Positions 27,764 through 60,150 of a DNA stretch of 64,000 bases are shown here, in pieces (positions within the stretch are counted from its first letter, which is position 1; every line of letters begins with the position of its first letter). The stretch is from positions 62,001 to 126,000 of IMG/VR virus record IMGVR_UViG_3300042511_000879. The stretch is one strand, 5' to 3'. The position numbers were made by a program, and so were the translations under genes. The notes beneath the pieces are model-generated. The model made no database searches, was not told the DNA's origin, and saw nothing but the letters and a program-made list of their open reading frames with translations.

Positions 27764-28968
27764 TATTTATTATAAATGTTACCTAAGTTATTAATCGCCG
27801 CTTTATTAAGTCCTTGTCCTATTGTAGAACCTGGTAAGATTCCATACACATTAGCTTGAATGGCAGCTCCTATATTTCTTCCCGCAATTACATCATTTGC
27901 GGCACTTGTGACTGCTTGGTCTGCTCTTCTTATAACATTCGAAAATACATTTTCGAATTTAGGAATTCTGTTAAGCGTCTCATCCTTTAACCTTTGTAGA
28001 GCTTCTGCTTTCTTTTTTTCTGCAAGAGCTTTTAAGTCTCGTGCGGCACTTTCCTTTACTTTATCAACTTTACCTTTAAGTTTATCTTTAGCAAATTCAA
28101 TAGGAGTTTTTGATGAGGATGAAAACATTTCTTGGTCAGGCGCGGGAGACAATTGAGCCTCTGCGTAACTTTGTTTAATGATTCCGTTTAACACTCTTGC
28201 TTCAACCTTTTCGATTTTTTCATATTTTATCGTAAGAGCTTCTTTTGCCATTTCAGGGTTTTTACTAAGATCTGCAAAAACAGTAGTTCCTGATGCTAAA
28301 TCAAACTCACAGTATTTTGCACCTATTAAAAAGTAGGGACGACCTTCTGGTCCAGAAATACCTGCATTTTTATTTTCGGTATCAATTTTTGGTTTCATAT
28401 TATCTGGAAATCCGGCAATAGCACTTTTATCTAGTTTTTTGGGAATCCCATTTACCTTTACATCTTCTACAATTGCAATCGATCGTACTTCAGTAACATA
28501 TATCCACATTCTAAACTTTCTTAAGTTAGCAGGGATTATGTAACTCCACTTTCTCTCGTCAAATATTGCTCTTCTATATAAGTGCATTAAACCAGAAATT
28601 GTAAGATTTAAAGATTCTAATGTTTCAATTTCAAATTTTGCATCATCACCTCCAATGTATGCATTTTGAGGATTATATTGTTGCAGTCTTTCTAGTCCCT
28701 TAAATGATTGCCAAAACCATGGCAATTCTTTATTAATAGTTTCTAGTGTTTTTATAAAATTTTGTAAGTCATTGAGTCTTTCTGCATAAAAAGAGTCTTG
28801 CGCTGCCAATGGTTTTAAAAAATTAACAGCCCCACCTGCAAGAAGTGGAGAGCTTTCTATATCATAAAAATCGAATAATAAAGCAAAAGAAAGATACGTC
28901 GGATCTTGGTAAGGGTATTTCCTGTAGGAACCTTTTCTAAAATCCATTGGTGTTTTAAAATCTGACAT
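27763..28968 (-). CDS. Tail-tube-fold baseplate protein (gp54/gp48-like), tentative
   Basis: Position between hub and spike; LETLESLNLTISGLMHLYRRAIFD...LRKFRMWIYVTEVR resembles tube-initiator proteins. Confidence 0.45.
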   Translation of the reverse strand: MSDFKTPMDFRKGSYRKYPYQDPTYLSFALLFDFYDIESSPLLAGGAVNFLKPLAAQDSFYAERLNDLQNFIKTLETINKELPWFWQSFKGLERLQQYNPQNAYIGGDDAKFEIETLESLNLTISGLMHLYRRAIFDERKWSYIIPANLRKFRMWIYVTEVRSIAIVEDVKVNGIPKKLDKSAIAGFPDNMKPKIDTENKNAGISGPEGRPYFLIGAKYCEFDLASGTTVFADLSKNPEMAKEALTIKYEKIEKVEARVLNGIIKQSYAEAQLSPAPDQEMFSSSSKTPIEFAKDKLKGKVDKVKESAARDLKALAEKKKAEALQRLKDETLNRIPKFENVFSNVIRRADQAVTSAANDVIAGRNIGAAIQANVYGILPGSTIGQGLNKAAINNLGNIYNK

Positions 28969-49956: not shown

Positions 49957-50880
49957 TTATATTACGTCAAAAAAGAACATGTGAAAGAATCTTGCGTTCT
50001 CAATAGCATCGCCAAAATATTTACTTGGCGCATGAATTTGTTTAGAATCGAATAGAACTAAACGGTTGTATACATTACCAACCTCATCGATTTTATCAAA
50101 ATTAGTTGAATCATAAAAATTTGCTTGAGCATTCTTGCCTTTAAATGTATCTTCAAACACAGAATAGTCTTCAAAATTATCAAATCTTTTTTTACCAGTA
50201 TTTTTACCAGAATAGAAAGATGTACCTGTTTCGAATGGAGCATCTTTAGTTAAGAATACCATTCCTGCATACATCTGACTGTCAACATGAAATACGGGTA
50301 GATCGCTTGCTACACAATATTGGAATACTCCATTTGCATAACTTTCATAATTCCAGTTTATAATTTCGCGGCCAATTATCTTTTCTAATTTCTCTTTAGT
50401 GCCATCTAGAATAAACCTAGTTTGACTTCTTTTACCTTTGTGATAATCAGAGGGGTTGTATTCTAGATTATTCATTGCAAAATCTCTAATAAAGTCAGGA
50501 TCTGCATAAAAATTATCAACTACAATTAGACTTTTATTTTCATTATAGAATCCAGAATAATAAGCAATAAAATTATCAATGCTTCCTGGATTATAAATAA
50601 GTTCTCCAAATTTAACTTGAATCTTTGCGCCTTTAGAGATATTAAAAACTAATCCAACACTATCATCTTCTAAAGGATAATATTTAGAAACATCTGGACG
50701 ACTAATAACTGTTAATGGTATTTCAATATCATCGACTATCAATGAACTAACTGGTTTAAAGGAATCACCGTCTTTTACTAGAATCCAACCAGTTGCATTA
50801 TAGTTATTATCGGATACTTTGGTAATTGAATCAAAAAACCAAAAAACGTTTGGATCTTTTGTAAAAGTGTTATAAATCAT
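49957..50880 (-). CDS. 2OG-Fe(II) oxygenase-like protein with an extra N-terminal beta domain
   Basis: LIVVDNFYADPD start of the catalytic domain, HVD...H (QIHAP)...R iron/2OG motif, NRLVLFDS. Confidence 0.75.
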   Translation of the reverse strand: MIYNTFTKDPNVFWFFDSITKVSDNNYNATGWILVKDGDSFKPVSSLIVDDIEIPLTVISRPDVSKYYPLEDDSVGLVFNISKGAKIQVKFGELIYNPGSIDNFIAYYSGFYNENKSLIVVDNFYADPDFIRDFAMNNLEYNPSDYHKGKRSQTRFILDGTKEKLEKIIGREIINWNYESYANGVFQYCVASDLPVFHVDSQMYAGMVFLTKDAPFETGTSFYSGKNTGKKRFDNFEDYSVFEDTFKGKNAQANFYDSTNFDKIDEVGNVYNRLVLFDSKQIHAPSKYFGDAIENARFFHMFFFDVI

Positions 50881-50906
50881 ATGTTTGTTTTTTGTTTATT
50901 ATACAA

Positions 50907-52880
50907 TTATTTAAAAGAAAGTTTCTCATCTCCTTTTTTATATGAAATCGTGTACGTTTTATTTCCTTTAACAATTTCTTTAGCTAAAATACCATCTGCT
51001 AATAAGTCTTCAACATACGTTTGAATTGCTCTTTTAAGAGGTCTAGCTCCATATTGAGCATCATACCCACGTTCTGCTAAAAATACTATCGCCGTTTTTG
51101 CAACTTTAATAATATATTCTTGTTCAACCATTCTTTCAATTACTTTTTGAATTTCGATTTCTGCAATTTTAGCAACATCTTCTTGTTTTAATCCATCAAA
51201 CAATACTATTTCATCCAATCTATTTAAGAATTCCGGAGCAAATTTGTTTTTAAGCTCTTTTCTGATAACAGTTTCCATTTCCATTTTGTGGGTGGCCGTA
51301 GAACTTGAACTTGAGAATCCGATTCCAGCCCCAAATTCTGCAACTCTTTTTGCTCCAACATTACTTGTCATAATAATGATAGTATTCGTAAAGTCAATAG
51401 TTCTACCAAGAGTATCTGTTAAACGACCCTCATCTAAAACCTGTAACAAGATATTGAAAATATCTGGGTGGGCCTTTTCAACTTCATCAAATAATACTAC
51501 TGAATATGGTTTACGTCGGACTTGTTCTGTTAACTGTCCACCATCCTCATGTCCTTCATATCCCGGAGGAGAACCAATAAGTCTACTTACGTTAAACTTT
51601 TCTTGGTATTCTGACATGTCGATTCTGATTAAAGAATCCTCGCTTCCGAAATAATATTCAGAAAGGGCTTTAACAGTTTCAGTTTTACCAACTCCAGTAG
51701 GTCCAATAAACATAAATGAACCGATAGGTTTTTTAGATGAACTTACTCCAGTTCGGCTTCTTTTAATAACTCTACATAGACCTTCAACCGCAGTATCTTG
51801 CCCGATAATCATCGCTTTTAATTCATTTTCCATATCAATAACAATTCTGCTCTCGTCATCGGTCATTCTTGTTACCGGAATTCCAGTAGATTCAGAAATT
51901 ACTTCAGCAATATCTTCATAAGTTACTGCCTTCTTATTTAGTCTAAGCGTCTCCTCCCATTCTTTGGTTCTTTTTGTTATCTCTTCTCGCTTACTAATTT
52001 CAAGGTCTCTTAAATTTCCGGCTTTTTCATAATTAGTAGCATCTGCTGCTTTTAACTTTGCGGCTTTTAATTTATCAGCTTCAATTTCAAGTTCTTTAAT
52101 AATTTCTGGAATTTTTACCTCTTTTAAATGTACTTTTGCTCCAGCCTCGTCCATAACATCAATTGCTTTGTCCGGTAATTCTCTTTGAGTAATATATCGG
52201 TCAGATAATACTACACAGGCTTTAATAGCGTCAGGAGTATATGATACTGAATGGAAGTCTTCGTAATTTGGTTTAATTCTGTCTAGAATTTCGATTGCAT
52301 CTTCAAGGGATGGTGGGTCTATAAAGATTTCTTGGAATCTTCTGGTAAGAGCTCCATCGGTTTCAATATTTTCACGATACTCATCGATTGTCGTAGCACC
52401 AATACATTGTACTTGTCCTCTTGCCAATGCCGGTTTTAAGATATTACTAGCATCTAATGAACCACTTACACCACCAGCGCCTACAATTGTGTGAATCTCA
52501 TCAATAAAGACAATAACATCTGGGTTCTCTTTAAGTTCATCAACAATGTTTTTCATTCGTTCCTCAAATTCTCCACGGTATTTTGTACCTGCAACTACGT
52601 TTGCAATATTAAGAGCAATTATACGTTTATTAAGAAGAGTCATTGCAACTTTCTTTTCAACAATACGTTGCGCAATTGCTTCAACTAGTGCAGTTTTACC
52701 AACCCCAGGATCCCCTAAAATAATTGGATTGTTTTTCTTTCTACGAGAAAGGATTTGACATATTCTATGGACCTCTTTTTCTCTTCCGATGATAGGGTCA
52801 AGTTTCCCATCTGCCGCTAGTTTAGTTAAGTCCTCTCCGAATTGGTCAATGAATGGAGTATTTGTTTTCTTACTGGTCAT
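50907..52880 (-). CDS. clpC: ClpC-type Hsp100 ATPase lacking the Clp N-terminal repeat domain
   Basis: Two AAA+ modules (GDPGVGKT and GPTGVGKT), UVR middle domain (NYEKAGNLRD), IGF loop (GAGIGFS); sequence begins directly at the D1 pre-helix. Confidence 0.92.
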   Translation of the reverse strand: MTSKKTNTPFIDQFGEDLTKLAADGKLDPIIGREKEVHRICQILSRRKKNNPIILGDPGVGKTALVEAIAQRIVEKKVAMTLLNKRIIALNIANVVAGTKYRGEFEERMKNIVDELKENPDVIVFIDEIHTIVGAGGVSGSLDASNILKPALARGQVQCIGATTIDEYRENIETDGALTRRFQEIFIDPPSLEDAIEILDRIKPNYEDFHSVSYTPDAIKACVVLSDRYITQRELPDKAIDVMDEAGAKVHLKEVKIPEIIKELEIEADKLKAAKLKAADATNYEKAGNLRDLEISKREEITKRTKEWEETLRLNKKAVTYEDIAEVISESTGIPVTRMTDDESRIVIDMENELKAMIIGQDTAVEGLCRVIKRSRTGVSSSKKPIGSFMFIGPTGVGKTETVKALSEYYFGSEDSLIRIDMSEYQEKFNVSRLIGSPPGYEGHEDGGQLTEQVRRKPYSVVLFDEVEKAHPDIFNILLQVLDEGRLTDTLGRTIDFTNTIIIMTSNVGAKRVAEFGAGIGFSSSSSTATHKMEMETVIRKELKNKFAPEFLNRLDEIVLFDGLKQEDVAKIAEIEIQKVIERMVEQEYIIKVAKTAIVFLAERGYDAQYGARPLKRAIQTYVEDLLADGILAKEIVKGNKTYTISYKKGDEKLSFK

Positions 52881-52931
52881 ATTGTGTATATTAATTTATT
52901 ATGGTAGTATTATAATATGTGCGGATCCCTG

Positions 52932-53144
52932 TTATGAATGGGTACCTTTTAAATTGTTAACCGAACGTTGAACACATTCAGGACATAGAGATGCAGTGGC
53001 TTCGGCTCCTACAACAGTCCAGTTCTCGCATGGTCCATCTTCAGGCCCATATTCTGCCCATTTACTCTTTTCCGGTTCTGAATTCTGACAAATCATCGAT
53101 ACGACCTTACGGCCTTTAACTTCAGTTTCTTTAGTTTTCCACAT
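52932..53144 (-). CDS. Small putative zinc-binding protein
   Basis: C...C...CPEC pattern; class-2 promoter at 53162-53188. Confidence 0.6.
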   Translation of the reverse strand: MWKTKETEVKGRKVVSMICQNSEPEKSKWAEYGPEDGPCENWTVVGAEATASLCPECVQRSVNNLKGTHS

Positions 53145-53189
53145 AGTATATTTATTTTAGATTTATATTGAGTTATTCCAATTTGTTTC

Positions 53190-54590
53190 AGGGTAAACTT
53201 AAAGAACCTTTGAGTTAAGTGAAAAATTTTTATTCTGTAATTCAGACCGGGTGCACCCTCCTATTGCGTGGGAAAATTTGGGTTTCAATCATCAAAAAAA
53301 TGAAATAATCTACCAGAACGATTGAACCGTTGAGGCCGTTTGAAATACATAAAGTCACATTGAGGGACTATTGGGCGGCCCTCCCCTAGCCCTATTAATA
53401 CCTATTGGCACATCGGTCGTCACAGTATACTGAGCACTCTATTGGAGGTATCAGAATGGGTGTGTCCTTCCTGTAGATACTCTATATAATAACGGATGTA
53501 CACTATAGGGGTTTTTAAATATCGTATACTATTAGATAGAATAGTTCTCTTTTTAATTAGAATCCCTACAGCACGCCCCCACCCCGCCCCTTTGGGACTC
53601 TATGGGATAGAGGTCAATTTTATTTTTTTCTATAGGATTTTTTTGAGAGCTTAGAGACTTGGAGTACCTCAGAGAGGTGAGAGAGCGGTGAGTCACCCTA
53701 CCTTTCACCTTTGAGACTTGGATACTTCTTATATCCTCATAGGACCTATTAGTTTCAACGGGTTACTCTTTATTTCACAGTACACTTCGTGCCTGACACA
53801 GTACCCTCAGGTCAATCTGAGCCAACCATCGGTAATTGGTAACGGTCTTATTGGTTAATTATAGGTTCTTTATGTTTCTAGTAACGGTGATATCCATTCT
53901 ATCGGTCTCAATTGGTCTTTGGTCACCTTCCGGACCTGGGTAATTTTTTGGGTAGGGCAACATTGAAGTACTCTGAGGGTGGGATGGACCATTGGCTACC
54001 ATCGGAGGACCATCAGAGGACCATTGACGCTGGGAGGGTCTCTCAACATTGAGGTATTGATATTCCCGGACGGGGATAATTCGTCCACTTCTATGAAACA
54101 CATTTATCAAAGGTCTATATTAGTTAGGAAGTCTAGAGCTTTGATCCTACAGTCCTTTGAGAACCTCTAGACCTGGCTTTTATAAGGATCCACCCTGGGT
54201 GCTGACCGCTCCGTAGACCTGCCCAACCGGTATTGAGGGTCAATGCACACGTGCCCTAGAGTCCAGTGGTGACTGGAAGAGTCCTGCTCTACCCTAGTTA
54301 CCCTGTGTCTGTAGTGAACTATTAGTATTATTGTCATTCTTGTGCAGAGCACACCTGCATTGTGCAGGCATTGACCTGCATTGCCTATTGCAACAGTTGA
54401 TCAGTGCACTACAGGTAGATAGGTCTATTGCCCTTACAACAATATTGAGCCTATTGAGCATATTGAACCTTTGAGGACATTGAGTAATCATTGAATTGCA
54501 TTGATTATTGCTACAGGGCATTGAGCCGGGCATTGCTACAGGACATTGATCCTGGACATTGCGCCGGGCATTGATCTGGGGACATTGATC
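53190..54590. other. Non-coding, GC-richer, repeat- and hairpin-rich island (left)
   Basis: About 1.4 kb without a credible gene in an otherwise fully packed genome; many (C/T)ATTG and GGACCAT motifs, hairpins and C runs. Confidence 0.7.
54350..54590 (+). repeat. Degenerate short-period (C/T)ATTG array
   Basis: About 19 ATTG copies between 54359 and 54587, mostly spaced 9-14 nt; the later copies read GG(A/G)CATTG. Confidence 0.85.
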
Positions 54591-54593
54591 CTC

Positions 54594-55298
54594 CTATTTG
54601 AATCTGGGAGTATTGATCCTGGGAGAGTTGAAACGGAGATTAGGCGCGGAGATACTCTTCTGTTTATAAGCTGGGCCTAGGTCCCTTTCTGGTGCCTTAT
54701 AAGGGGACATTGTATTTGTCTTGTCAAAACTTGTTATAGGGAATGGGGCTGGTTCCGATACCTTATTATTAGATGGGTCATATTGTTTTTGGCTAGTACG
54801 TTTTATAGGTGCACTATCTGGTTGTTTATTAACATTTGCGTTAGGGTCTCCATTATCGTGCCCGAAGTCACTATCTATAGAACCTCTATCTCCACCTGTA
54901 TTGTTTGCTATCATATTACCCATTTGTGCATCTATAAGAGATTCTTTAAACCCCTTAGAACGAGGTTGAGGTGTTTGAGCTATATCGGTTTCCTTAGTTG
55001 GTGTTTGGGCCTGATCGCTTGACGATAGTGTTTGTTTATCGTATTGGACATTTTGATTGGCTGGATTATTTTGCTTTCGGGCAGTATCTGAGGTTGCCTT
55101 ATTACCCTGTTGGGTTTGAGCATTAACATCACTTCCAGCCTTATTTATACCCGTTGCATCTATAGGAGATATTGAACTGTCTCCTGGGGATGGATTTAAA
55201 CTACTAGGAACTGATGAGGTATCTGTCTTATTAGAGGTTTGAGTCTTAGCAGCATTTACCCTATCGCTTATACTAATTTGAGTTAGACCTATCTTCAT
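54594..55298 (-). CDS. Low-complexity, probably disordered S/T/Q/P/D-rich protein
   Basis: 705-nt open frame with few hydrophobic residues. Confidence 0.6.
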   Translation of the reverse strand: MKIGLTQISISDRVNAAKTQTSNKTDTSSVPSSLNPSPGDSSISPIDATGINKAGSDVNAQTQQGNKATSDTARKQNNPANQNVQYDKQTLSSSDQAQTPTKETDIAQTPQPRSKGFKESLIDAQMGNMIANNTGGDRGSIDSDFGHDNGDPNANVNKQPDSAPIKRTSQKQYDPSNNKVSEPAPFPITSFDKTNTMSPYKAPERDLGPAYKQKSISAPNLRFNSPRINTPRFK

Positions 55299-55413
55299 AT
55301 AGTTTTTCTAGTTCCATTTGGAGCTTTCTGATTTTTAGGAAGTTATTTGGATCCGTCATTTTAGTTTCCAATATCTCCTTGTTAAGTTGAGCAATACGTA
55401 ATCTGTTTTCCAT
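55273..55413 (-). CDS. 46-aa hypothetical protein (below the ORF-track cut-off)
   Basis: Hand translation MENRLRIAQLNKEILETKMTDPNNFLKIRKLQMELEKLYEDRSNSN*; AATATATA motif at 55439-55446. Confidence 0.5.
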   Translation of the reverse strand: MENRLRIAQLNKEILETKMTDPNNFLKIRKLQMELEKLYEDRSNSN

Positions 55414-55444
55414 GATGATATGTGTTTAGGTTATACTCTATATA

Positions 55445-55876
55445 TTATGCTTCCATTGGAACTTGGTAAGGAACGTATGCTCTATCAGCCCAAGTTTTAG
55501 CTCCTACTGCGCTATATTGTGCTTGGTTATAAAGGTTTGTATTTCTATATAGTTGATTAATCGTACCTACTGTTAGGTTACCCATTATTAACTCATCCAT
55601 TAAGACTATTTTGTTCCCTTTACGGGCGAATAATGTTAGGTAATAATCTCCACCATCTGGGCAGAATTCAACTGTTTGTAAGGCACTTTTATTATAACCT
55701 GTGATGATTGATTCTGGGTAGGTCATGAAATATTCGTTTTCATAGTCTTTAGCATCTACTATGGTCATCCAACCCGCTTTACATTTTGTTATGAAACGGA
55801 ATTTACCTTTTGTGTTTGGAAAGGCTCCTAATACGTTTACTGTTCGTACGTCTGTTGTGTTTACTAAATTTGTCAT
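55445..55876 (-). CDS. Hypothetical protein under a class-1 promoter
   Basis: ORF track; promoter at 55901-55931. Confidence 0.7.
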   Translation of the reverse strand: MTNLVNTTDVRTVNVLGAFPNTKGKFRFITKCKAGWMTIVDAKDYENEYFMTYPESIITGYNKSALQTVEFCPDGGDYYLTLFARKGNKIVLMDELIMGNLTVGTINQLYRNTNLYNQAQYSAVGAKTWADRAYVPYQVPMEA

Positions 55877-55887
55877 AATGGTGTGTT

Positions 55888-56032
55888 TTAATTAGATATG
55901 TAAATATAATCATTATTTGTGATTCCGGAAACTGTTTGCGCAAGTATTTTCAGAAAGTTATTAACAATTGTTGTTCATAAGTTTTTTGAGAAACTGTTTC
56001 GGGATTCATATAAATTGATTATATTTACATAT
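55888..56032. promoter_or_regulatory. Divergent pair of class-1 promoters
   Basis: Minus: TTTC(55931-55928)-N19-TATATTTA(55908-55901). Plus: TTTC(55997-56000)-N19-TATATTTA(56020-56027). Confidence 0.85.
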
Positions 56033-56039
56033 GAAAAAT

Positions 56040-56165
56040 AGCAAAATGACATAACGGGTTCGTATAGCACAAAGAATCGAGAGATTCGACACGGGCGGTC
56101 CTTTAAACCAGGGGAGGAAGAGTAGACTCCAGCTCGTCTTCTATTTAGAGGTCTGAAACGCCACT
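56040..56165 (+). ncRNA. Candidate small structured RNA
   Basis: Lies directly downstream of a class-1 promoter, has no usable ORF (ATG...TAA after 7 codons), is GC-richer, and contains a GAATC-GAGA-GATTC GNRA hairpin plus nested stems. Confidence 0.45.
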
Positions 56166-56167
56166 AG

Positions 56168-56245
56168 AAACTTTAACAAAAAATTAACATAAAATAGTTT
56201 CGGTTCTTGAAACTATTGATTATATTTACATATCTAATTAAAACA
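56168..56245 (+). promoter_or_regulatory. Class-1 promoter
   Basis: TTAACA repeats, TTTC(56198-56201)-N19-TATATTTA(56221-56228)CATATCTAATT. Confidence 0.85.
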
Positions 56246-56252
56246 AAGAACT

Positions 56253-56447
56253 ATGAAAATCACCATCAACATCCTTCCAGCCTTAGGTTCCCTAATCGCG
56301 TTCGGGCTTACGTATTCCTTATTAACTGGAACTCTTCAAAAATTCATACCATTCCATGGTACCCTTAATGAAATGACAACTACAATATGTCTATTTTGGA
56401 TAGGTACTCTTTTATTGTTCTGCTCATTCGAAAAATTTAACAAATAA
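56253..56447 (+). CDS. Small membrane protein (two hydrophobic helices)
   Basis: ORF track; follows a class-1 promoter. Confidence 0.6.
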   Translation: MKITINILPALGSLIAFGLTYSLLTGTLQKFIPFHGTLNEMTTTICLFWIGTLLLFCSFEKFNK

Positions 56448-56496
56448 TACTGAAACAAAACCAATTTTTAATATATAAATCTAAAATCTTATAACT

Positions 56497-57633
56497 ATGG
56501 CAATTGCAACTCTTTCTAACACCTTAATTGAACAACGTAAAGTAGCTACATTGGAGGCTCAAAACCTTCGTAAAGTAGTACCATTCCGCGATATCAATTT
56601 AATAGATGGTGAATCTATCGAATATAATGGTCAAAAAATTAACCTTACACCTACTGCATTCAAAAATCTTTTAGGTCTATTAGGTATGAGTAACCAATTT
56701 GCTCAGAAATTCGAATCTCTCTTTACTAAAGAGGCTAAATCTCAGTTTATCAACACTATGAAAAATGCAATGGCATCTAATAGTGGTAAACTTTCTGAAG
56801 TAACCCTTGTACTTAACCCTATTAGTAAATCGGTAGTGGCTATCACCAAGAAAGATCAATTTGGTATATCTAACCAACAATTCATGGGAGTTGCTGAGAA
56901 TATCATAGATAACCACGGTATGAACGTAACAAACTGGTCAGTAGACCCAGGAACTGGTATTGTAACTATTAATGCATTTAATCCTAAAGCGAATTTCGCA
57001 GTTCAAGGTTTATCTGATGAGGTATTTACTGGAGGTGTTACTTTCAAAAATTCACCTAAAGATGGTTTCCAAGTTCTTCCTTATGTTAATCGTCAGTTTT
57101 GTACTAATGGTTTAACTACTGCGTTTGCTGAGGAGTCTTATACTCTTCAATCTTTGGACCAAGGTTCTATGGAAAAGTTCTTTGAAAATATGAACGAATT
57201 ACGTAAGAATAACTTTGCTCCTACTGGTTTTGCTGACCGTGTAAGAATGGCTCATAACACTCCTGCTTCCCTAAGCGAATTACAGTTTGCACATAACCTT
57301 ATTGAACCATATGCTGGAGAACGTTCTAACACTTGGATTCCTTATGCTGAAAACATGAATGCATTCTATAATGCTGGTTTTGATAACATATCTGGTCAAC
57401 AGATGAAACATGCTAAATCAAATACTTCTGTATGGGATGTTATCAATGGTGTTACTCACTTTGCAACCCATGGTGCTGGTATTATCGATACAGACATGCA
57501 AGACTATAATGCATCTGAATTAATGGTAAAATCTGGTAACCTATTCGGTAAAAAAGCTTTTGACCACGAAAATACTATGCCAGACCTTTTTAGAGGTAGA
57601 GACTTAGTACGTAGTGGTTCATTATTAAACTAA
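56497..57633 (+). CDS. DUF932-like phage/plasmid protein
   Basis: FKNSPKDG...RQFCTNGL and TSVWDVINGVTHFATH match the DUF932 NSxDG...RxxCxNG and WxxxNxxT motifs. Confidence 0.65.
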   Translation: MAIATLSNTLIEQRKVATLEAQNLRKVVPFRDINLIDGESIEYNGQKINLTPTAFKNLLGLLGMSNQFAQKFESLFTKEAKSQFINTMKNAMASNSGKLSEVTLVLNPISKSVVAITKKDQFGISNQQFMGVAENIIDNHGMNVTNWSVDPGTGIVTINAFNPKANFAVQGLSDEVFTGGVTFKNSPKDGFQVLPYVNRQFCTNGLTTAFAEESYTLQSLDQGSMEKFFENMNELRKNNFAPTGFADRVRMAHNTPASLSELQFAHNLIEPYAGERSNTWIPYAENMNAFYNAGFDNISGQQMKHAKSNTSVWDVINGVTHFATHGAGIIDTDMQDYNASELMVKSGNLFGKKAFDHENTMPDLFRGRDLVRSGSLLN

Positions 57634-57660
57634 TATTTGGTAGTCTGCATATCGGAATTA

Positions 57661-57691
57661 AAGGGACCATTCTCACATAGGTCCCTTTTTT
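57661..57691 (+). terminator. Intrinsic terminator
   Basis: AAGGGACC...GGTCCCTT stem followed by a T run, after the DUF932-like gene. Confidence 0.8.
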
Positions 57692-57699
57692 ATGTGAAA

Positions 57700-57780
57700 T
57701 TGTTAATAACTTTTTGAAAATAATTTGAAAAACTGTTTCCAGTGTCGTGGATATTGATTATATTTACATATCTAATTTTA
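57700..57780 (+). promoter_or_regulatory. Class-1 promoter
   Basis: AATTGTTAATAAC box, TTTC(57736-57739)-N19-TATATTTA(57759-57766). Confidence 0.85.
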
Positions 57781-57793
57781 ACAAAGAAACACC

Positions 57794-58267
57794 ATGATGA
57801 CTCAAGCACAAATCACCGAACAAAACGAAATCGAATCTAAATTGGCTCATAACTACGAGTTGACTCACAGAGAGAATATGATTTTACTATATTCTGATTT
57901 TCATAAGGATGCCTACGGTTTCCGTCCTCGTACTATTAATGTATATGCCTTAACCACTGAGGAACTGGAGGCTGATTTTGACCGTTTCGAAGCGACATGT
58001 AAGATTAATAGACACGAAGAGGAAATGGCCGAAATGGAGGCTGATATCGCGTTCCGTGCCCTTATAACTAATACAATCGCTATAGGTGCAAACGATGAGG
58101 TTACTGCATTACGTTGGATCGCTGAAGGTGCTGTAGAAGATTATGGTTATGACTATGAGCATTTCCTTTGGAACCAAGGTATAGCATACTCTGCCTACGG
58201 TAAGGAGTTGGCTAAGAGATTTGCTCCTATCTGGGGTAAAGCTCTTCAAACCCAGAAAGTTGCATAA
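57794..58267 (+). CDS. Hypothetical phage protein
   Basis: YSDFHKDAYGFRPR motif; has its own class-1 promoter. Confidence 0.7.
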   Translation: MMTQAQITEQNEIESKLAHNYELTHRENMILLYSDFHKDAYGFRPRTINVYALTTEELEADFDRFEATCKINRHEEEMAEMEADIAFRALITNTIAIGANDEVTALRWIAEGAVEDYGYDYEHFLWNQGIAYSAYGKELAKRFAPIWGKALQTQKVA

Positions 58268-58269
58268 AC

Positions 58270-58340
58270 TTTAACAAACTTTTAACATTTAAAAGTTTCC
58301 GGTTTCCACAATATTGATTATATTTACATATCTAATTAAA
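58270..58340 (+). promoter_or_regulatory. Class-1 promoter
   Basis: TTAACA repeats, TTTC(58296-58299)-N19-TATATTTA(58319-58326). Confidence 0.85.
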
Positions 58341-58350
58341 ACACCACATT

Positions 58351-59460
58351 ATGAACAGACAATCTTACTTAATCCGCACACAACCTAACGAATTCATCGT
58401 TTTAGTAAACACGAAAAACCCAATTGACACCCTCTTAATCGAGCCTGGTCATTCAAAATATACTTGGGTCCAAAACCAAGACGCTAACCGTATTATCAAC
58501 ATCACCGAAACTGGTAGATGGACAAGTAATAAGGACTATAATAACGATTACGGAACCTCAACATCTAAACAACCTCAATCGGTTAACCCTTGTGCCCCTG
58601 TTGAGGTTACACTTACCAAATTAGACGACTTAAATATCGATGATTCCCTATTTACCAGCCTTCCAACTGGAACTATCTTTGACCAGTTTTGTTCAACTGA
58701 AGGTGGATTCTTACCTGGAACTAATATAATGGCTGCTGGAGCTCCTGGTGTCGGTAAAACAACAGTGCTATTAGAACTTCTATCTAAGCTATCTGCTCAA
58801 GGTAAACGGGTCTTATTTATATCTGCCGAAATGAACCAGATAGATATGGCACGTTACCTTAAAAGATTCCCACACTGGGGACAATTACCTATCCTTTTCC
58901 TATCTGACTACACTGAGTCTTGTCCAAAAGGAGTAATTGAAGGTGTACTTAACCAAGGATGGGACGTTGTCTTAACCGATTCATATACCGAAGTTAACGA
59001 TACCATCAAGGAGGAATGTAACATGACCAGAGGTAAAACCGAAAAATGGTTCCTAGACCTAATGACTCAGCATAATAAAGGTGGTAACAAGACGAAAACA
59101 TATACAACCTTCGTAACTATCCTGCAATTATCTAAAGGTGGTAATTTCGTTGGTTCTAATAAACTGAAACACATGACAACTGCGATGATGATGTTGGACT
59201 GGGACGGAAACGAAAACTCAGGTAGAAGGTTCATGGAGTTCTCTAAAAACAGAACAGGTCAAGTCGGTAAAAAACTATATTTCGAATTATCAGATGGTGT
59301 TTCCTTCGACGAAGGCCGATATACAAGAGACCTATTTAACGACGAGGTCCTAGCTGAGGAAAGAAAAGCCCTAACAGGAGAAAGTAATGCCTTCGACAAA
59401 CTATTCGGTTTCGACAAGGATGCCGTACCTGAGGAATTAAAAACCCTGGTAGAACTATAA
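58351..59460 (+). CDS. RadA/Sms-like RecA-fold ATPase without Zn finger or Lon-like domain
   Basis: GGFLPG...GAPGVGKTT, VLFISAEM, LTDS, GSNKLKHMTTAMM and KNRTG (compare RadA KNRFG). Confidence 0.75.
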   Translation: MNRQSYLIRTQPNEFIVLVNTKNPIDTLLIEPGHSKYTWVQNQDANRIINITETGRWTSNKDYNNDYGTSTSKQPQSVNPCAPVEVTLTKLDDLNIDDSLFTSLPTGTIFDQFCSTEGGFLPGTNIMAAGAPGVGKTTVLLELLSKLSAQGKRVLFISAEMNQIDMARYLKRFPHWGQLPILFLSDYTESCPKGVIEGVLNQGWDVVLTDSYTEVNDTIKEECNMTRGKTEKWFLDLMTQHNKGGNKTKTYTTFVTILQLSKGGNFVGSNKLKHMTTAMMMLDWDGNENSGRRFMEFSKNRTGQVGKKLYFELSDGVSFDEGRYTRDLFNDEVLAEERKALTGESNAFDKLFGFDKDAVPEELKTLVEL

Positions 59461-60120
59461 CAAATATACGGCTGGCAGCCGAAACTGCCTTAATTAGATA
59501 GAGATTTCCGGGAGTGTGGTGTTCCCGGAATTCTTGTATTCCGAGGCTGGCAGTTTCAAAATACCCGCTGGGGCAAGGGACGATTACCAATGGCCGGGCA
59601 AGGCAGAATTGTTTCACCCGCTGCGGCACTAGGAACTGGTAGAAATCTGGTGCTGGGCATGGTTTCGGTTGGTTTTTGTGGTGCCCAGGAGTGTGGAGAG
59701 GGTCCGGAGTGTCTCGGAGGGTGACCCAACTCGACGAGAGGTTTAAGGCCCAATGAGGAACATTGAGGAACATGAAGGGGCCCTTAGAGGAACATTGAGG
59801 TGACATTGCGAGCTTGGAGTGCCTGCTATATATCATTTTAATAAAAAAGGTAGAACTGGGGTACCTGGTTGGCTGGAGATTGAAAGGGGTTAGGGAGGGT
59901 TGGTAGGACCATAAGGGGCTTAGAATCTGGACAGGTATGGGGGTCAGGAGGGGTAGAAGGGTTCTTTATAGGGGGTTTATATCCTTATACTGTTATTCTT
60001 ATATCTGTATATCTATATAGAGGTTTAGATGTCTTAGATGTTTTTGTTTTAGGTTTATTAGATTTATTTCTTTTTTATTGTGGGGGAGGGGTGGATTCCG
60101 GACGTGCCGGACCTAAATAA
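59461..60120. other. Non-coding, GC-richer, hairpin-rich island (right) with G runs and an AT-rich tract
   Basis: Multiple perfect stems in 59469-59730, GAGGAACATTGAGG repeats, G runs at 59886-59975 and 60082-60094, and a T-rich tract at 59976-60080. Confidence 0.7.
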
Positions 60121-60144
60121 AAAAGAGGACCTTTAGGGTCCTCT
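60118..60144 (-). terminator. Intrinsic terminator
   Basis: AGAGGACC/GGTCCTCT stem (60124-60144) followed by a T run on the minus strand, after 60151..60396. Confidence 0.8.
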
Positions 60145-60150
60145 GTGTGG

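What the first reader, a model, noticed from the sequence alone, without database searches (positions are those of the whole stretch)
53190..54350. 1.4-kb gene-free, GC-richer structured island at the end of the long minus-strand block
Seen: no credible ORF and visibly higher GC. There is a long hairpin around 53670-53713 (AGGTGA/TCACCT enclosing GGTGA-G-TCACC), flanked by direct repeats GAGACTTGGA. GGACCAT occurs three times in 53987-54026, and CATTGA recurs. Known: GC-rich intergenic islands in AT-rich genomes often mark structured RNAs, and large phages keep non-coding space for origins, pac sites and termini. Inference: a large ncRNA, or a cis element such as an origin or genome end.
Basis: partly seen in the sequence, partly recalled or inferred. 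Interest (0 to 1): 0.7.

Follow-up and report, generated by a model that had tools for sequence, protein, structure and literature searches.

The report
Repeat-built non-coding spacer in jumbo phage
A real, conserved 1.45-kb gene-free, GC-richer stretch in a ~233-kb lake-water jumbo phage is not a large folded RNA or a genome end; it is built from short one-directional repeats and a few invariant words, so it is most likely a protein-binding DNA control site of unknown role.

Summary
Window 53145-54593 (1,449 nt) has no credible ORF under any stop-codon reading. Its GC is 0.43 against 0.34 for the genome. Independent DNA runs assemble it without a break, and all relatives keep a gap at the same place.

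The structured-RNA reading fails:
- No Rfam match.
- Folding energies are no better than shuffled sequence on either strand.
- No covariation across 16 distinct homologues.
- Overall divergence equals that of synonymous sites in the neighbouring ClpB-like gene.

Only seven invariant words of 8-13 nt and one conserved hairpin (53668-53715, more stable on the + strand) stand out. The genome-end reading is not supported either: sequencing depth is flat, the assemblies are circularly permuted, and the large terminase lies 112 kb away.

What is there is a mosaic of short direct-repeat arrays, all in one orientation. ATTG occurs 37 times against 11 expected. About 25 CATTGA-type units at 9-13-nt spacing sit at 54359-54620. 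More distant lineages keep a GC-rich 1.2-1.45-kb gap with a different repeat word fused to CCNGG. A smaller array of the same word lies 5 kb away in a second GC-rich gap.

Best reading: a cis-acting, protein-bound DNA region. Origin-like is the leading guess, but several origin features were tested and not met. Function remains unproven.

The parts
53145..54593 (.). Whole gene-free, GC-richer island (1,449 nt, GC 0.43)
   Evidence: The homologous gap is present in all close relatives, and no conserved gene is called in it.
54359..54625 (+). Array of about 25 CATTGA-type units (GGRCATTGANCCN). All point the same way at 9-13-nt spacing. It abuts the stop codon of ORF234.
   Evidence: It is the densest such cluster in the 236-kb genome. 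Relatives carry 5-19 copies. The spacing histogram peaks at 10 and 13 nt.
54180..54350 (.). GC-richest stretch (up to 0.49). It cannot be aligned between relatives.
   Evidence: A1 columns about 400-600.
54046..54156 (-). The most widely conserved block. It includes the invariant TCCTAACTAATAT (54117-54129) and TTTCA.AGAAGTG.AC..ATTATC.C.GTCCGG. It is the only part still recognisable in lineages whose ClpB is 70-86% identical.
   Evidence: nhmmer E about 1e-5 to the gaps of L016, L017, L028 and L013; invariant runs.
53987..54026 (+). Four 11-nt units GGACCAT[TC]G / CTACCATCG
   Evidence: period 11, 93% matches; conserved in relatives.
53956..53966 (-). Invariant word TCAATGTTGCC
53668..53715 (+).
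   Evidence: It forms in 14 of 16 lineages and always folds better on the + strand. 80% of cells pair against 35-58% in slid controls, but there is almost no compensatory change.
53645..53725 (+). Run of 9-11-nt units of the form CTNNGAG, including the two GAGACTTGGA copies (53654, 53713). Copy number differs between lineages.
   Evidence: and the alignment.
53564..53590 (-). G-quadruplex-like word GGGGCGGGGTGGGGGCGTGCTGTAGGG. The 17-nt core is invariant or nearly so across the close lineages.
   Evidence: It is one of only two such words in the genome.
53776..53818 (+). 21-nt insert flanked by an 8-nt duplication (CACAGTAC). In other lineages it is absent, or sits at a second place inside the element.
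   Evidence: (family D3).
53150..53195 (-). Promoter/leader of the ORF70-ClpB operon (CCTGAAACAAA ... TATAAATCTAAAAT). The same word is found only upstream of ORF378.
59461..60150 (.). Second GC-rich gap (GC 0.47). It carries 3-4 GGAACATTGAGG units at 59747-59810 in the same orientation, and the genome's other G-quadruplex-like word at 59939-59975 (+).
   Evidence: A relative has about 6 units.
54594..55876 (-). ORF234 (predicted disordered, fast-evolving) and ORF143 (conserved, no known fold). They form the operon that ends at the array.
55890..58331 (.). Five copies of the phage's 26-copy promoter-like word (...TTGAT TATATTTACATAT CTAATTAAAACA). They drive ORF143-ORF234 (-) and the only +-strand block: ORF378 (DUF932-like by Atlas feature search), ORF157, and ORF369 (RecA/RadA/DnaB-type ATPase).

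Best explanation
The island is a cis-acting DNA region on which proteins assemble. It is not a gene, and it is not a large folded RNA.

Anatomy:
- An array of short one-directional repeats sits directly after an operon driven by the phage's common promoter word. In this lineage the repeats are CATTGA-type units, each next to a CCNGG-like word.
- Next comes about 1 kb of fast-evolving, GC-rich spacer.
- The spacer holds a handful of invariant words, further 11-nt repeat runs, one conserved strand-specific hairpin and a G-quadruplex-like tract.
- A smaller array of the same word sits 5 kb away. Between the two arrays lie the only +-strand genes, including a RecA/RadA/DnaB-type ATPase.

Proposed mechanism (inferred, not shown): a sequence-specific protein binds the repeats cooperatively, and its recognition word changes between lineages. 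Binding sets up a nucleoprotein complex, possibly bridging the two arrays. That complex would start or control a DNA transaction. Replication initiation is the leading guess. A boundary or regulatory role for the adjacent gene module is the next.

Shown: the anatomy, its conservation in position, the constraint on the repeat word, and the absence of RNA-structure signals. Inferred: protein binding and the process served.
For: Repeat word:
- One orientation: ATTG 37 against 11 expected, 7 on the reverse strand. CAAT is 36 against 8.1 expected from the gap's own composition.
- The array is the densest such cluster in the genome.
- It is present with 5-19 units in 13 lineages, at spacings peaking at 10 and 13 nt.
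- In the 1-kb core, CAAT sites are better conserved than the average 4-mer (0.63 against 0.42, p = 0.008).

Conservation pattern:
- Seven invariant runs of 8 nt or more against 0.26 expected if invariant columns were scattered.
- The rest drifts like synonymous sites. This is the pattern of binding sites separated by spacers.

Distant lineages:
- Lineages with ClpB at 70% identity keep a GC-rich 1.2-1.45-kb gap at the same place.
- It begins with an array of a different word plus CCNGG: CACT[CT]CC[AG]G, AGCT[TC]CCNGG, GGCCTCTGG.
- One block is still alignable.

Second gap: it carries the same GGAACATTGAGG units in the same orientation.

Neighbourhood:
- ORF369 matches RecA, RadA and DnaB-C.

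Structured RNA ruled against.
Against: - No protein was shown or predicted to bind the repeats. ORF143 has no recognisable fold, ORF234 looks disordered, and no Rep-like initiator was found.
- Classical origin features are missing. No stretch is more AT-rich than the genome average, and DnaA boxes are not enriched. Cumulative GC skew does not turn here.
- Sharing of the array word between the two gaps could not be shown statistically, and was not seen in the most distant lineage.
- The TTGAT of the promoters belongs to a genome-wide promoter word and does not change with the array word.
- Higher GC is unusual for a purely DNA-level site and is what one expects of RNA genes.
- Most of the region evolves at the neutral rate.
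- An RNA library holds pieces of a relative's gap at depths like those of ClpB, so transcription is not excluded.
Confidence: 0.4

Rival explanations
1. A transcribed but largely unfolded non-coding RNA. It could be the long 3' tail of the ORF143-ORF234 operon (- strand, carrying UCAAUG repeats) or an antisense +-strand transcript (carrying CAUUGA repeats and the hairpin). Its repeats would bind or titrate an RNA-binding protein, or load a termination factor.
For: - GC is above the genome level, as for the tRNA gaps.
- No intrinsic terminator separates ORF234 from the island, so read-through is likely.
- The conserved hairpin folds better on the + strand through G-U pairs in 16 lineages, and the G-U pair is kept.
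- The array's 12-13-nt period is C-rich on the - strand.
- Contigs from an RNA library cover parts of a relative's island.
Against: - The RNA-library contigs carry no strand information, and their depth equals that of the neighbouring gene, so they may be DNA carry-over.
- The repeat word has the same chromosomal orientation in both gaps. That puts it in opposite senses relative to the flanking transcription units.
- No promoter word points into the island on the + strand.
- No fold beyond one hairpin.
Confidence: 0.2
2. Mostly neutral filler in a plastic part of the genome. Under this view it is a spacer that tolerates slippage-generated repeats and small insertions. Only the embedded promoter/leader and a few signals would be functional, with no function for the island as a whole.
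For: - Mean identity of the core (0.74) equals that of ClpB four-fold sites (0.72). Invariant columns are 38% against 34%.
- Repeat copy numbers and a 21-nt insert vary between lineages.
- The neighbourhood gains and loses small ORFs.
- Two of the seven invariant words belong to the ORF70 leader.
Against: - Phage genomes are compact, yet a gap of 1.2-1.5 kb persists where sequence similarity has gone.
- Neutral sequence in a 34% GC genome should not hold 43-49% GC in every lineage.
- The repeat word is oriented, conserved above background, and repeated in a second gap.
- Five invariant words lie far from any gene start.
Confidence: 0.2
3. A packaging or DNA-entry signal. Examples are a pac site bound by terminase, a physical genome end, or a T5-style injection-stop region next to the first-expressed genes.
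For: - Large untranslated repeat regions of this size, conserved in order across relatives, are known in T5 (1.2-kb Repeat Region 3; bioRxiv 10.1101/866236).
- The island adjoins a cluster of five copies of the phage's common promoter word.
- TGATC occurs in many array units. From memory, this recalls the P1 pac hexamers.
Against: - Depth is flat and contigs are unbroken across it in four DNA runs.
- Three assemblies are permuted, with breaks elsewhere, and the contig ends overlap.
- TerL is 112 kb away.
- No DnaA-box pairs.
- No Dam-type methylase gene was found.
- Only contigs, not raw reads, could be laid, so read-start pile-ups were not testable.
Confidence: 0.1
4. A large structured non-coding RNA of the GOLLD/ROOL/HEARO kind.
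For: - A long GC-richer gap in an AT-rich phage from lake water.
- One conserved hairpin.
Against: - No Rfam match.
- z-scores are ordinary.
- Covariation is absent.
- Divergence is near neutral.
Confidence: 0.03

Closest known systems
Untranslated repeat regions of phage T5 and relatives (Repeat Region 3, about 1.2 kb, proposed injection stop signal; bioRxiv 10.1101/866236)
   Same: - A kilobase-scale gene-free stretch in a large lytic phage.
- Built from many direct repeats, inverted repeats and palindromes.
- The order is conserved across relatives while neighbouring ORFs vary.
- A second, related repeat region lies a few kb away.
- It sits beside a promoter-dense gene module.
   Different: - The T5 region lies in the long terminal repeat and carries paired DnaA boxes. 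Here there is no sign of a terminal repeat at the site and no DnaA boxes.
- No sequence similarity.
- Here the repeat word changes between lineages.
Iteron-type origins (plasmid and phage origins; P4 ori plus its distant crr element; T4 oriE with 12-nt repeats). The details of these are from memory.
   Same: - Tandem direct repeats in one orientation at about one-helical-turn spacing.
- A second cluster of the same word several kb away.
- A DNA-transaction ATPase gene lies between the clusters.
   Different: - No AT-rich unwinding stretch, no DnaA boxes, no recognisable initiator gene and no skew turn.
- The island is far larger than a typical origin, and GC-rich rather than AT-rich.
Plasmid and phage centromeres (parC of R1, tubC/tubS; from memory)
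   Same: Arrays of 10-13-bp direct repeats that a small adaptor protein coats cooperatively.
   Different: No tubulin-like or ParA-type partner gene in the genome. Only the P-loop of ORF369 matched, below the family cut-off. An actin-type ParM was not searched for.
Large structured RNAs of phages and lake metagenomes (GOLLD RF01998, ROOL RF03087, HEARO RF02033; accessions from memory)
   Same: Long, GC-richer, gene-free stretch in a phage from lake water.
   Different: No model match, no covariation and no excess folding energy.

Membership tests
Large structured ncRNA (GOLLD / ROOL / HEARO / OLE type) | Match to a curated covariance model | tested here: not met
   Rfam 15 scan of 50000-58000 at E <= 1 gave only two chance-level hits, both outside the island.
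Large structured ncRNA (GOLLD / ROOL / HEARO / OLE type) | Conserved secondary structure supported by compensatory changes | tested here: not met
   Across 16 lineages at 58-85% identity, RNAalifold gives a covariation term near 0 and 0-1 compensatory pairs. A scan for stacked covarying pairs found only 4-bp noise helices.
Large structured ncRNA (GOLLD / ROOL / HEARO / OLE type) | Folding energy clearly better than shuffled sequence along its length | tested here: not met
   z stays between about -2 and +2 in 150-nt windows on both strands. The mean over 15 homologues is about -0.5, except at two local spots.
Large structured ncRNA (GOLLD / ROOL / HEARO / OLE type) | Discrete transcript | tested here: inconclusive
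   One RNA library holds short contigs of a relative over parts of the island, at depths like ClpB and without strand information.
Iteron-type replication origin | Tandem direct repeats in one orientation | tested here: met
Iteron-type replication origin | Adjacent AT-rich unwinding element | tested here: not met
   40-nt windows across the island are mostly below the genome's 66% AT. Only short stretches reach 65-80%.
Iteron-type replication origin | DnaA boxes or other host-initiator sites | tested here: not met
   No box with one mismatch or fewer in the island. The genome-wide count (52) equals expectation (50).
Iteron-type replication origin | Initiator gene next to the repeats | tested here: inconclusive
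   The neighbours have no known family: ORF70, ORF143 and ORF234 match nothing, and ORF157 matches only an uncharacterised PHROG. The ORF143 model matches no known fold. A RecA/RadA/DnaB-type ATPase lies 3.8 kb away.
Iteron-type replication origin | Turn in cumulative GC skew | tested here: not met
   Skew falls monotonically along the genome, following gene orientation. There is only a local wiggle at the +-strand block.
Genome terminus / pac or cos site | Depth step, read or contig ends at the site | tested here: not met
   Single contigs span 52729-55676 at flank-level depth in three runs. Only contigs, not reads, were available.
Genome terminus / pac or cos site | Proximity to terminase genes | tested here: not met
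   TerL is at genome 227.7 kb and the island at 115.1-116.6 kb.
T5-type untranslated repeat region (injection stop signal) | Kilobase-scale untranslated region with a conserved order of repeats across relatives | tested here: met
   compared.
T5-type untranslated repeat region (injection stop signal) | Location in a long terminal repeat, with paired DnaA boxes | tested here: not met
   No doubled depth and no DnaA boxes.
Partition centromere | Partner NTPase (ParA, or tubulin-like TubZ/PhuZ) encoded by the element | tested here: not met
   No tubulin match. The only CbiA/ParA hit is a below-cut-off P-loop match in ORF369. ParM was not searched for.

The most novel reading that the evidence does not exclude
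The two GC-rich repeat regions (53145-54593 and 59461-60150) work as a pair that brackets a promoter-dense gene module. Together they would form a protein-bridged DNA structure, either a split origin of the P4 ori/crr type or a T5-like entry or boundary signal. The recognition word evolves quickly (CATTGA, CACTCC or AGCTTCC, each joined to a constant CCNGG-like half) in step with an unidentified phage protein. The genome's only two G-quadruplex-like tracts, one per region and on opposite strands, would be part of the device.
Probability: 0.2. Interest if true: 0.6.

Novelty: new variant of a known kind. Interest (0 to 1): 0.35.

Why it matters
If the arrays are a real protein-binding site, this family of uncultured lake-water jumbo phages offers two things. 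One is a natural series in which a DNA recognition word has been exchanged while the architecture stayed constant. The other is a candidate origin or boundary element in a group of phages where no such signals are known.

It is also a useful caution. A long GC-rich gap in an AT-rich phage is not in itself a sign of a folded RNA. Here every RNA-structure test was negative, and most of the sequence drifts at the neutral rate.

Tried and rejected
- Similarity to known phages: none with megablast or blastn.
- tRNA or tmRNA: none in the window.
- Alternative genetic codes: no frame opens.
- Metagenome scan with the G-rich invariant word: it returned only unrelated GC-rich DNA. None matched the element's profile, so that scan was wasted.
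- A degenerate pattern for the conserved block: it found no contigs beyond those already held.
- An apparent natural deletion of half the element (L218): it turned out to be a run of N in a scaffold.
- Sharing of the array word between the two gaps across lineages: shared 7- and 8-mers were not above shuffled expectation.
- A link between the array word and the TTGAT of the promoters: the promoter word is genome-wide (26 copies) and does not change with the array word.
- A genome-wide polar (Chi- or KOPS-like) role for CATTG: its strand skew is ordinary, rank 108 of 406.
- Palindrome or restriction-site enrichment: modest and inconsistent, 1.0-2.0 times expectation.
- Dam-type methylase to go with the GATC in the array: none found.
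- ORF143 as a DNA-binding candidate: the model is confident (pLDDT 82), but no match in PDB or AlphaFold clusters.
- ORF234: predicted disordered.
- RNA evidence: only unstranded contigs of a relative.

Full report
**Context.** The window is bases 62001-126000 of a 236,071-bp viral contig from lake water. Its two ends overlap imperfectly: 1-2097 matches 233191-236071 at 92-95% identity. Two near-identical sister contigs of 234 kb break at other places. The genome is therefore about 233 kb with a circular map. GC is 0.339. Nearly all genes lie on the minus strand, and 29 tRNA genes sit elsewhere. Baseplate genes, a split family-B polymerase and a large terminase mark it as a large tailed phage with no close cultured relative.

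**The observation.** The gene-free stretch runs from 53145 to 54593 (1,449 nt).
- On one side lie a 70-codon ORF and a ClpB-like AAA+ gene. On the other lies a 234-codon ORF.
- No reading frame opens even if one stop codon is read through.
- Gene callers on independent assemblies leave the stretch empty.
- GC is 0.43 and reaches 0.49.
- The other GC-rich gaps of this genome are tRNA clusters. This gap has no tRNA and no Rfam match.
- In three DNA runs a single contig crosses the whole stretch at the depth of its flanks, so it is not a misassembly.

**Relatives.** Starting from the ClpB-like protein and the 70-residue neighbour, I collected the homologous gap from 16 distinct lineages, 58-85% identical to each other over the core. 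Lineages whose ClpB is only about 70% identical still have a GC-rich gap of 1.2-1.45 kb at the same place. A profile of our element finds one block in them at E about 1e-5.

**Is it a folded RNA?** Every test was negative.
- Sliding folding energies are within about two standard deviations of shuffled sequence on both strands.
- Averaged over 15 homologues, the z-score is about -0.5 everywhere except two local spots.
- RNAalifold on the hairpin segment gives a covariation term near zero and 0-1 compensatory pairs on either strand.
- A scan of all column pairs for stacked covarying pairs found only 4-bp helices of the kind noise gives.

The one hairpin (53668-53715) is a genuine conserved feature. 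It forms in 14 of 16 lineages. It is always more stable on the + strand because of G-U pairs, and 80% of cells pair against 35-58% in slid controls. But both arms are themselves conserved words, and compensatory change is almost absent.

**How constrained is it?** Mean pairwise identity of the core is 0.74. The four-fold degenerate sites of the adjacent ClpB gene in the same genomes give 0.72. Invariant columns are 38% against 34%. So most of the island drifts at about the neutral rate. Constraint is concentrated in seven invariant runs of 8-13 nt, against 0.26 expected by chance. Two of these belong to a leader shared only with ORF378.

**What it is made of.** The island is a mosaic of short direct-repeat runs that all point the same way.
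- ATTG occurs 37 times on the + strand against 11 expected, and only 7 times on the other strand.
- About 25 ATTG-containing units lie in an array at 54359-54620, as units of the form GGRCATTGANCCN. It starts right after the stop codon of ORF234 and is the densest such cluster in the genome.
- Thirteen lineages carry 5-19 units, at spacings that peak at 10 and 13 nt.
- In the core, CAAT sites are conserved better than the average 4-mer (p = 0.008).
- Further runs are four 11-nt GGACCAT[TC]G-type units (53987-54026) and a set of CTNNGAG units around the hairpin, whose number varies between lineages.
- In the distant lineages the array sits at the same position but uses another word, again joined to CCNGG: CACT[CT]CC[AG]G, AGCT[TC]CCNGG or GGCCTCTGG.

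**The second gap.** A second GC-rich gap (59461-60150) carries three or four GGAACATTGAGG units in the same orientation. A relative has about six. The only two G-quadruplex-like words in the whole genome lie one in each gap, on opposite strands.

**Surroundings.** Between the two gaps lie ORF234 and ORF143 (minus strand) and the only +-strand block.
- ORF378 is DUF932-like by Atlas feature search.
- ORF157 has no known function.
- ORF369 is a RecA/RadA/DnaB-type ATPase.
- Five copies of a 26-copy promoter-like word are packed here. The word is conserved in all lineages.

**Interpretation.** Oriented short repeats at roughly helical spacing, invariant words separated by drifting spacers of kept length, and a repeat word that is exchanged between lineages while the architecture stays: these are the marks of a DNA region that proteins bind. 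I therefore read the island as a cis-acting nucleoprotein site (confidence 0.4).

An origin is the leading guess, but it is not a member of the classical kind:
- No AT-rich unwinding stretch and no DnaA boxes.
- No initiator gene recognised.
- No skew turn.

A genome end or pac site is unlikely. A centromere lacks a partner NTPase.

The rivals that remain open are these:
- An unfolded transcript whose repeats bind an RNA-binding protein. This is supported by the GC content, the lack of a terminator after ORF234 and the +-strand bias of the hairpin.
- Largely neutral filler with a few embedded signals.

The closest described thing in overall form is the 1.2-kb untranslated Repeat Region 3 of T5-like phages (bioRxiv 10.1101/866236). 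It shares the size, the repeat-built nature, the conservation of order and a second related region a few kb away. It differs in lying in a terminal repeat and in carrying DnaA boxes.

**Verdict.** This is a real and conserved feature whose exciting reading (a large structured RNA) is refuted and whose function is unproven. Interest is modest (0.35). It would rise if the paired arrays prove to be a co-evolving protein-DNA recognition system.

Noticed in passing
window 55890-55937 (-), 55985-56032, 56186-56257, 57706-57795, 58266-58355 (+); 26 copies genome-wide: A promoter-like word of about 45 nt, GTTT[CT]C-N17-19-(A)TTGAT-TATATTTACATAT-CTAATTAAAACA, precedes many genes and is conserved in all related lineages. 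Some copies carry a GAAAC-T-GTTTC palindrome upstream. Its layout resembles the -33/-7 promoters of Bacteroidota (from memory), which would hint at the host.
   Followed up: partly
window 53150-53195 (-) and 56450-56496 (+): ORF70 and ORF378 alone share the leader CTGAAACAAA ... TATAAATCTAAAAT just before their start codons. This suggests the two divergent units are regulated together.
   Followed up: partly
window 53564-53590 (-) and 59939-59975 (+): These are the only two G-quadruplex-like words in the 236-kb genome. One lies in each GC-rich gap, on opposite strands. The core of the first is invariant or nearly so across the close lineages.
   Followed up: partly
whole genome; array at window 54399-54615: GATC is at 0.42 of its expected frequency genome-wide (295 against 710) but reaches about 10 per kb in the repeat array. 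No Dam-type methylase gene was found.
   Followed up: partly
window 53776-53818; L009:3870, L030:4612: A 21-nt insert (TCAGGCACGAAGTGTACTGTG) with an 8-nt duplication of GTACTGTG occurs at one of two alternative places inside the element, depending on the lineage. It is found nowhere else in the genome.
   Followed up: partly
window 56040-56150: A small GC-rich piece lies between divergent promoters. An RNA-library contig of a relative covers 55925-56130, and the bin to its left (55842-56008) has a local depth peak. This is a possible small RNA.
   Followed up: no
G000:C1:22620-23366 and 28105-28452: The family-B DNA polymerase matches in separate pieces about 5 kb apart, as if it were split or interrupted.
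   Followed up: no
G000:C1:201806-201895: Within the 29-gene tRNA cluster, ARAGORN reports one tRNA-like gene with a four-base anticodon (ttga).
   Followed up: no
G000:C1:1-2097 and 233191-236071: The contig ends overlap at only 92-95% identity. The record is therefore a circularly closed assembly that joins two strain variants, not a fragment at 77% completeness.
   Followed up: yes
L218:2252-2351: One public scaffold has a run of N inside this element. Assemblers evidently struggle with the repeat array, so apparent deletions of the element in databases should be distrusted.
   Followed up: yes
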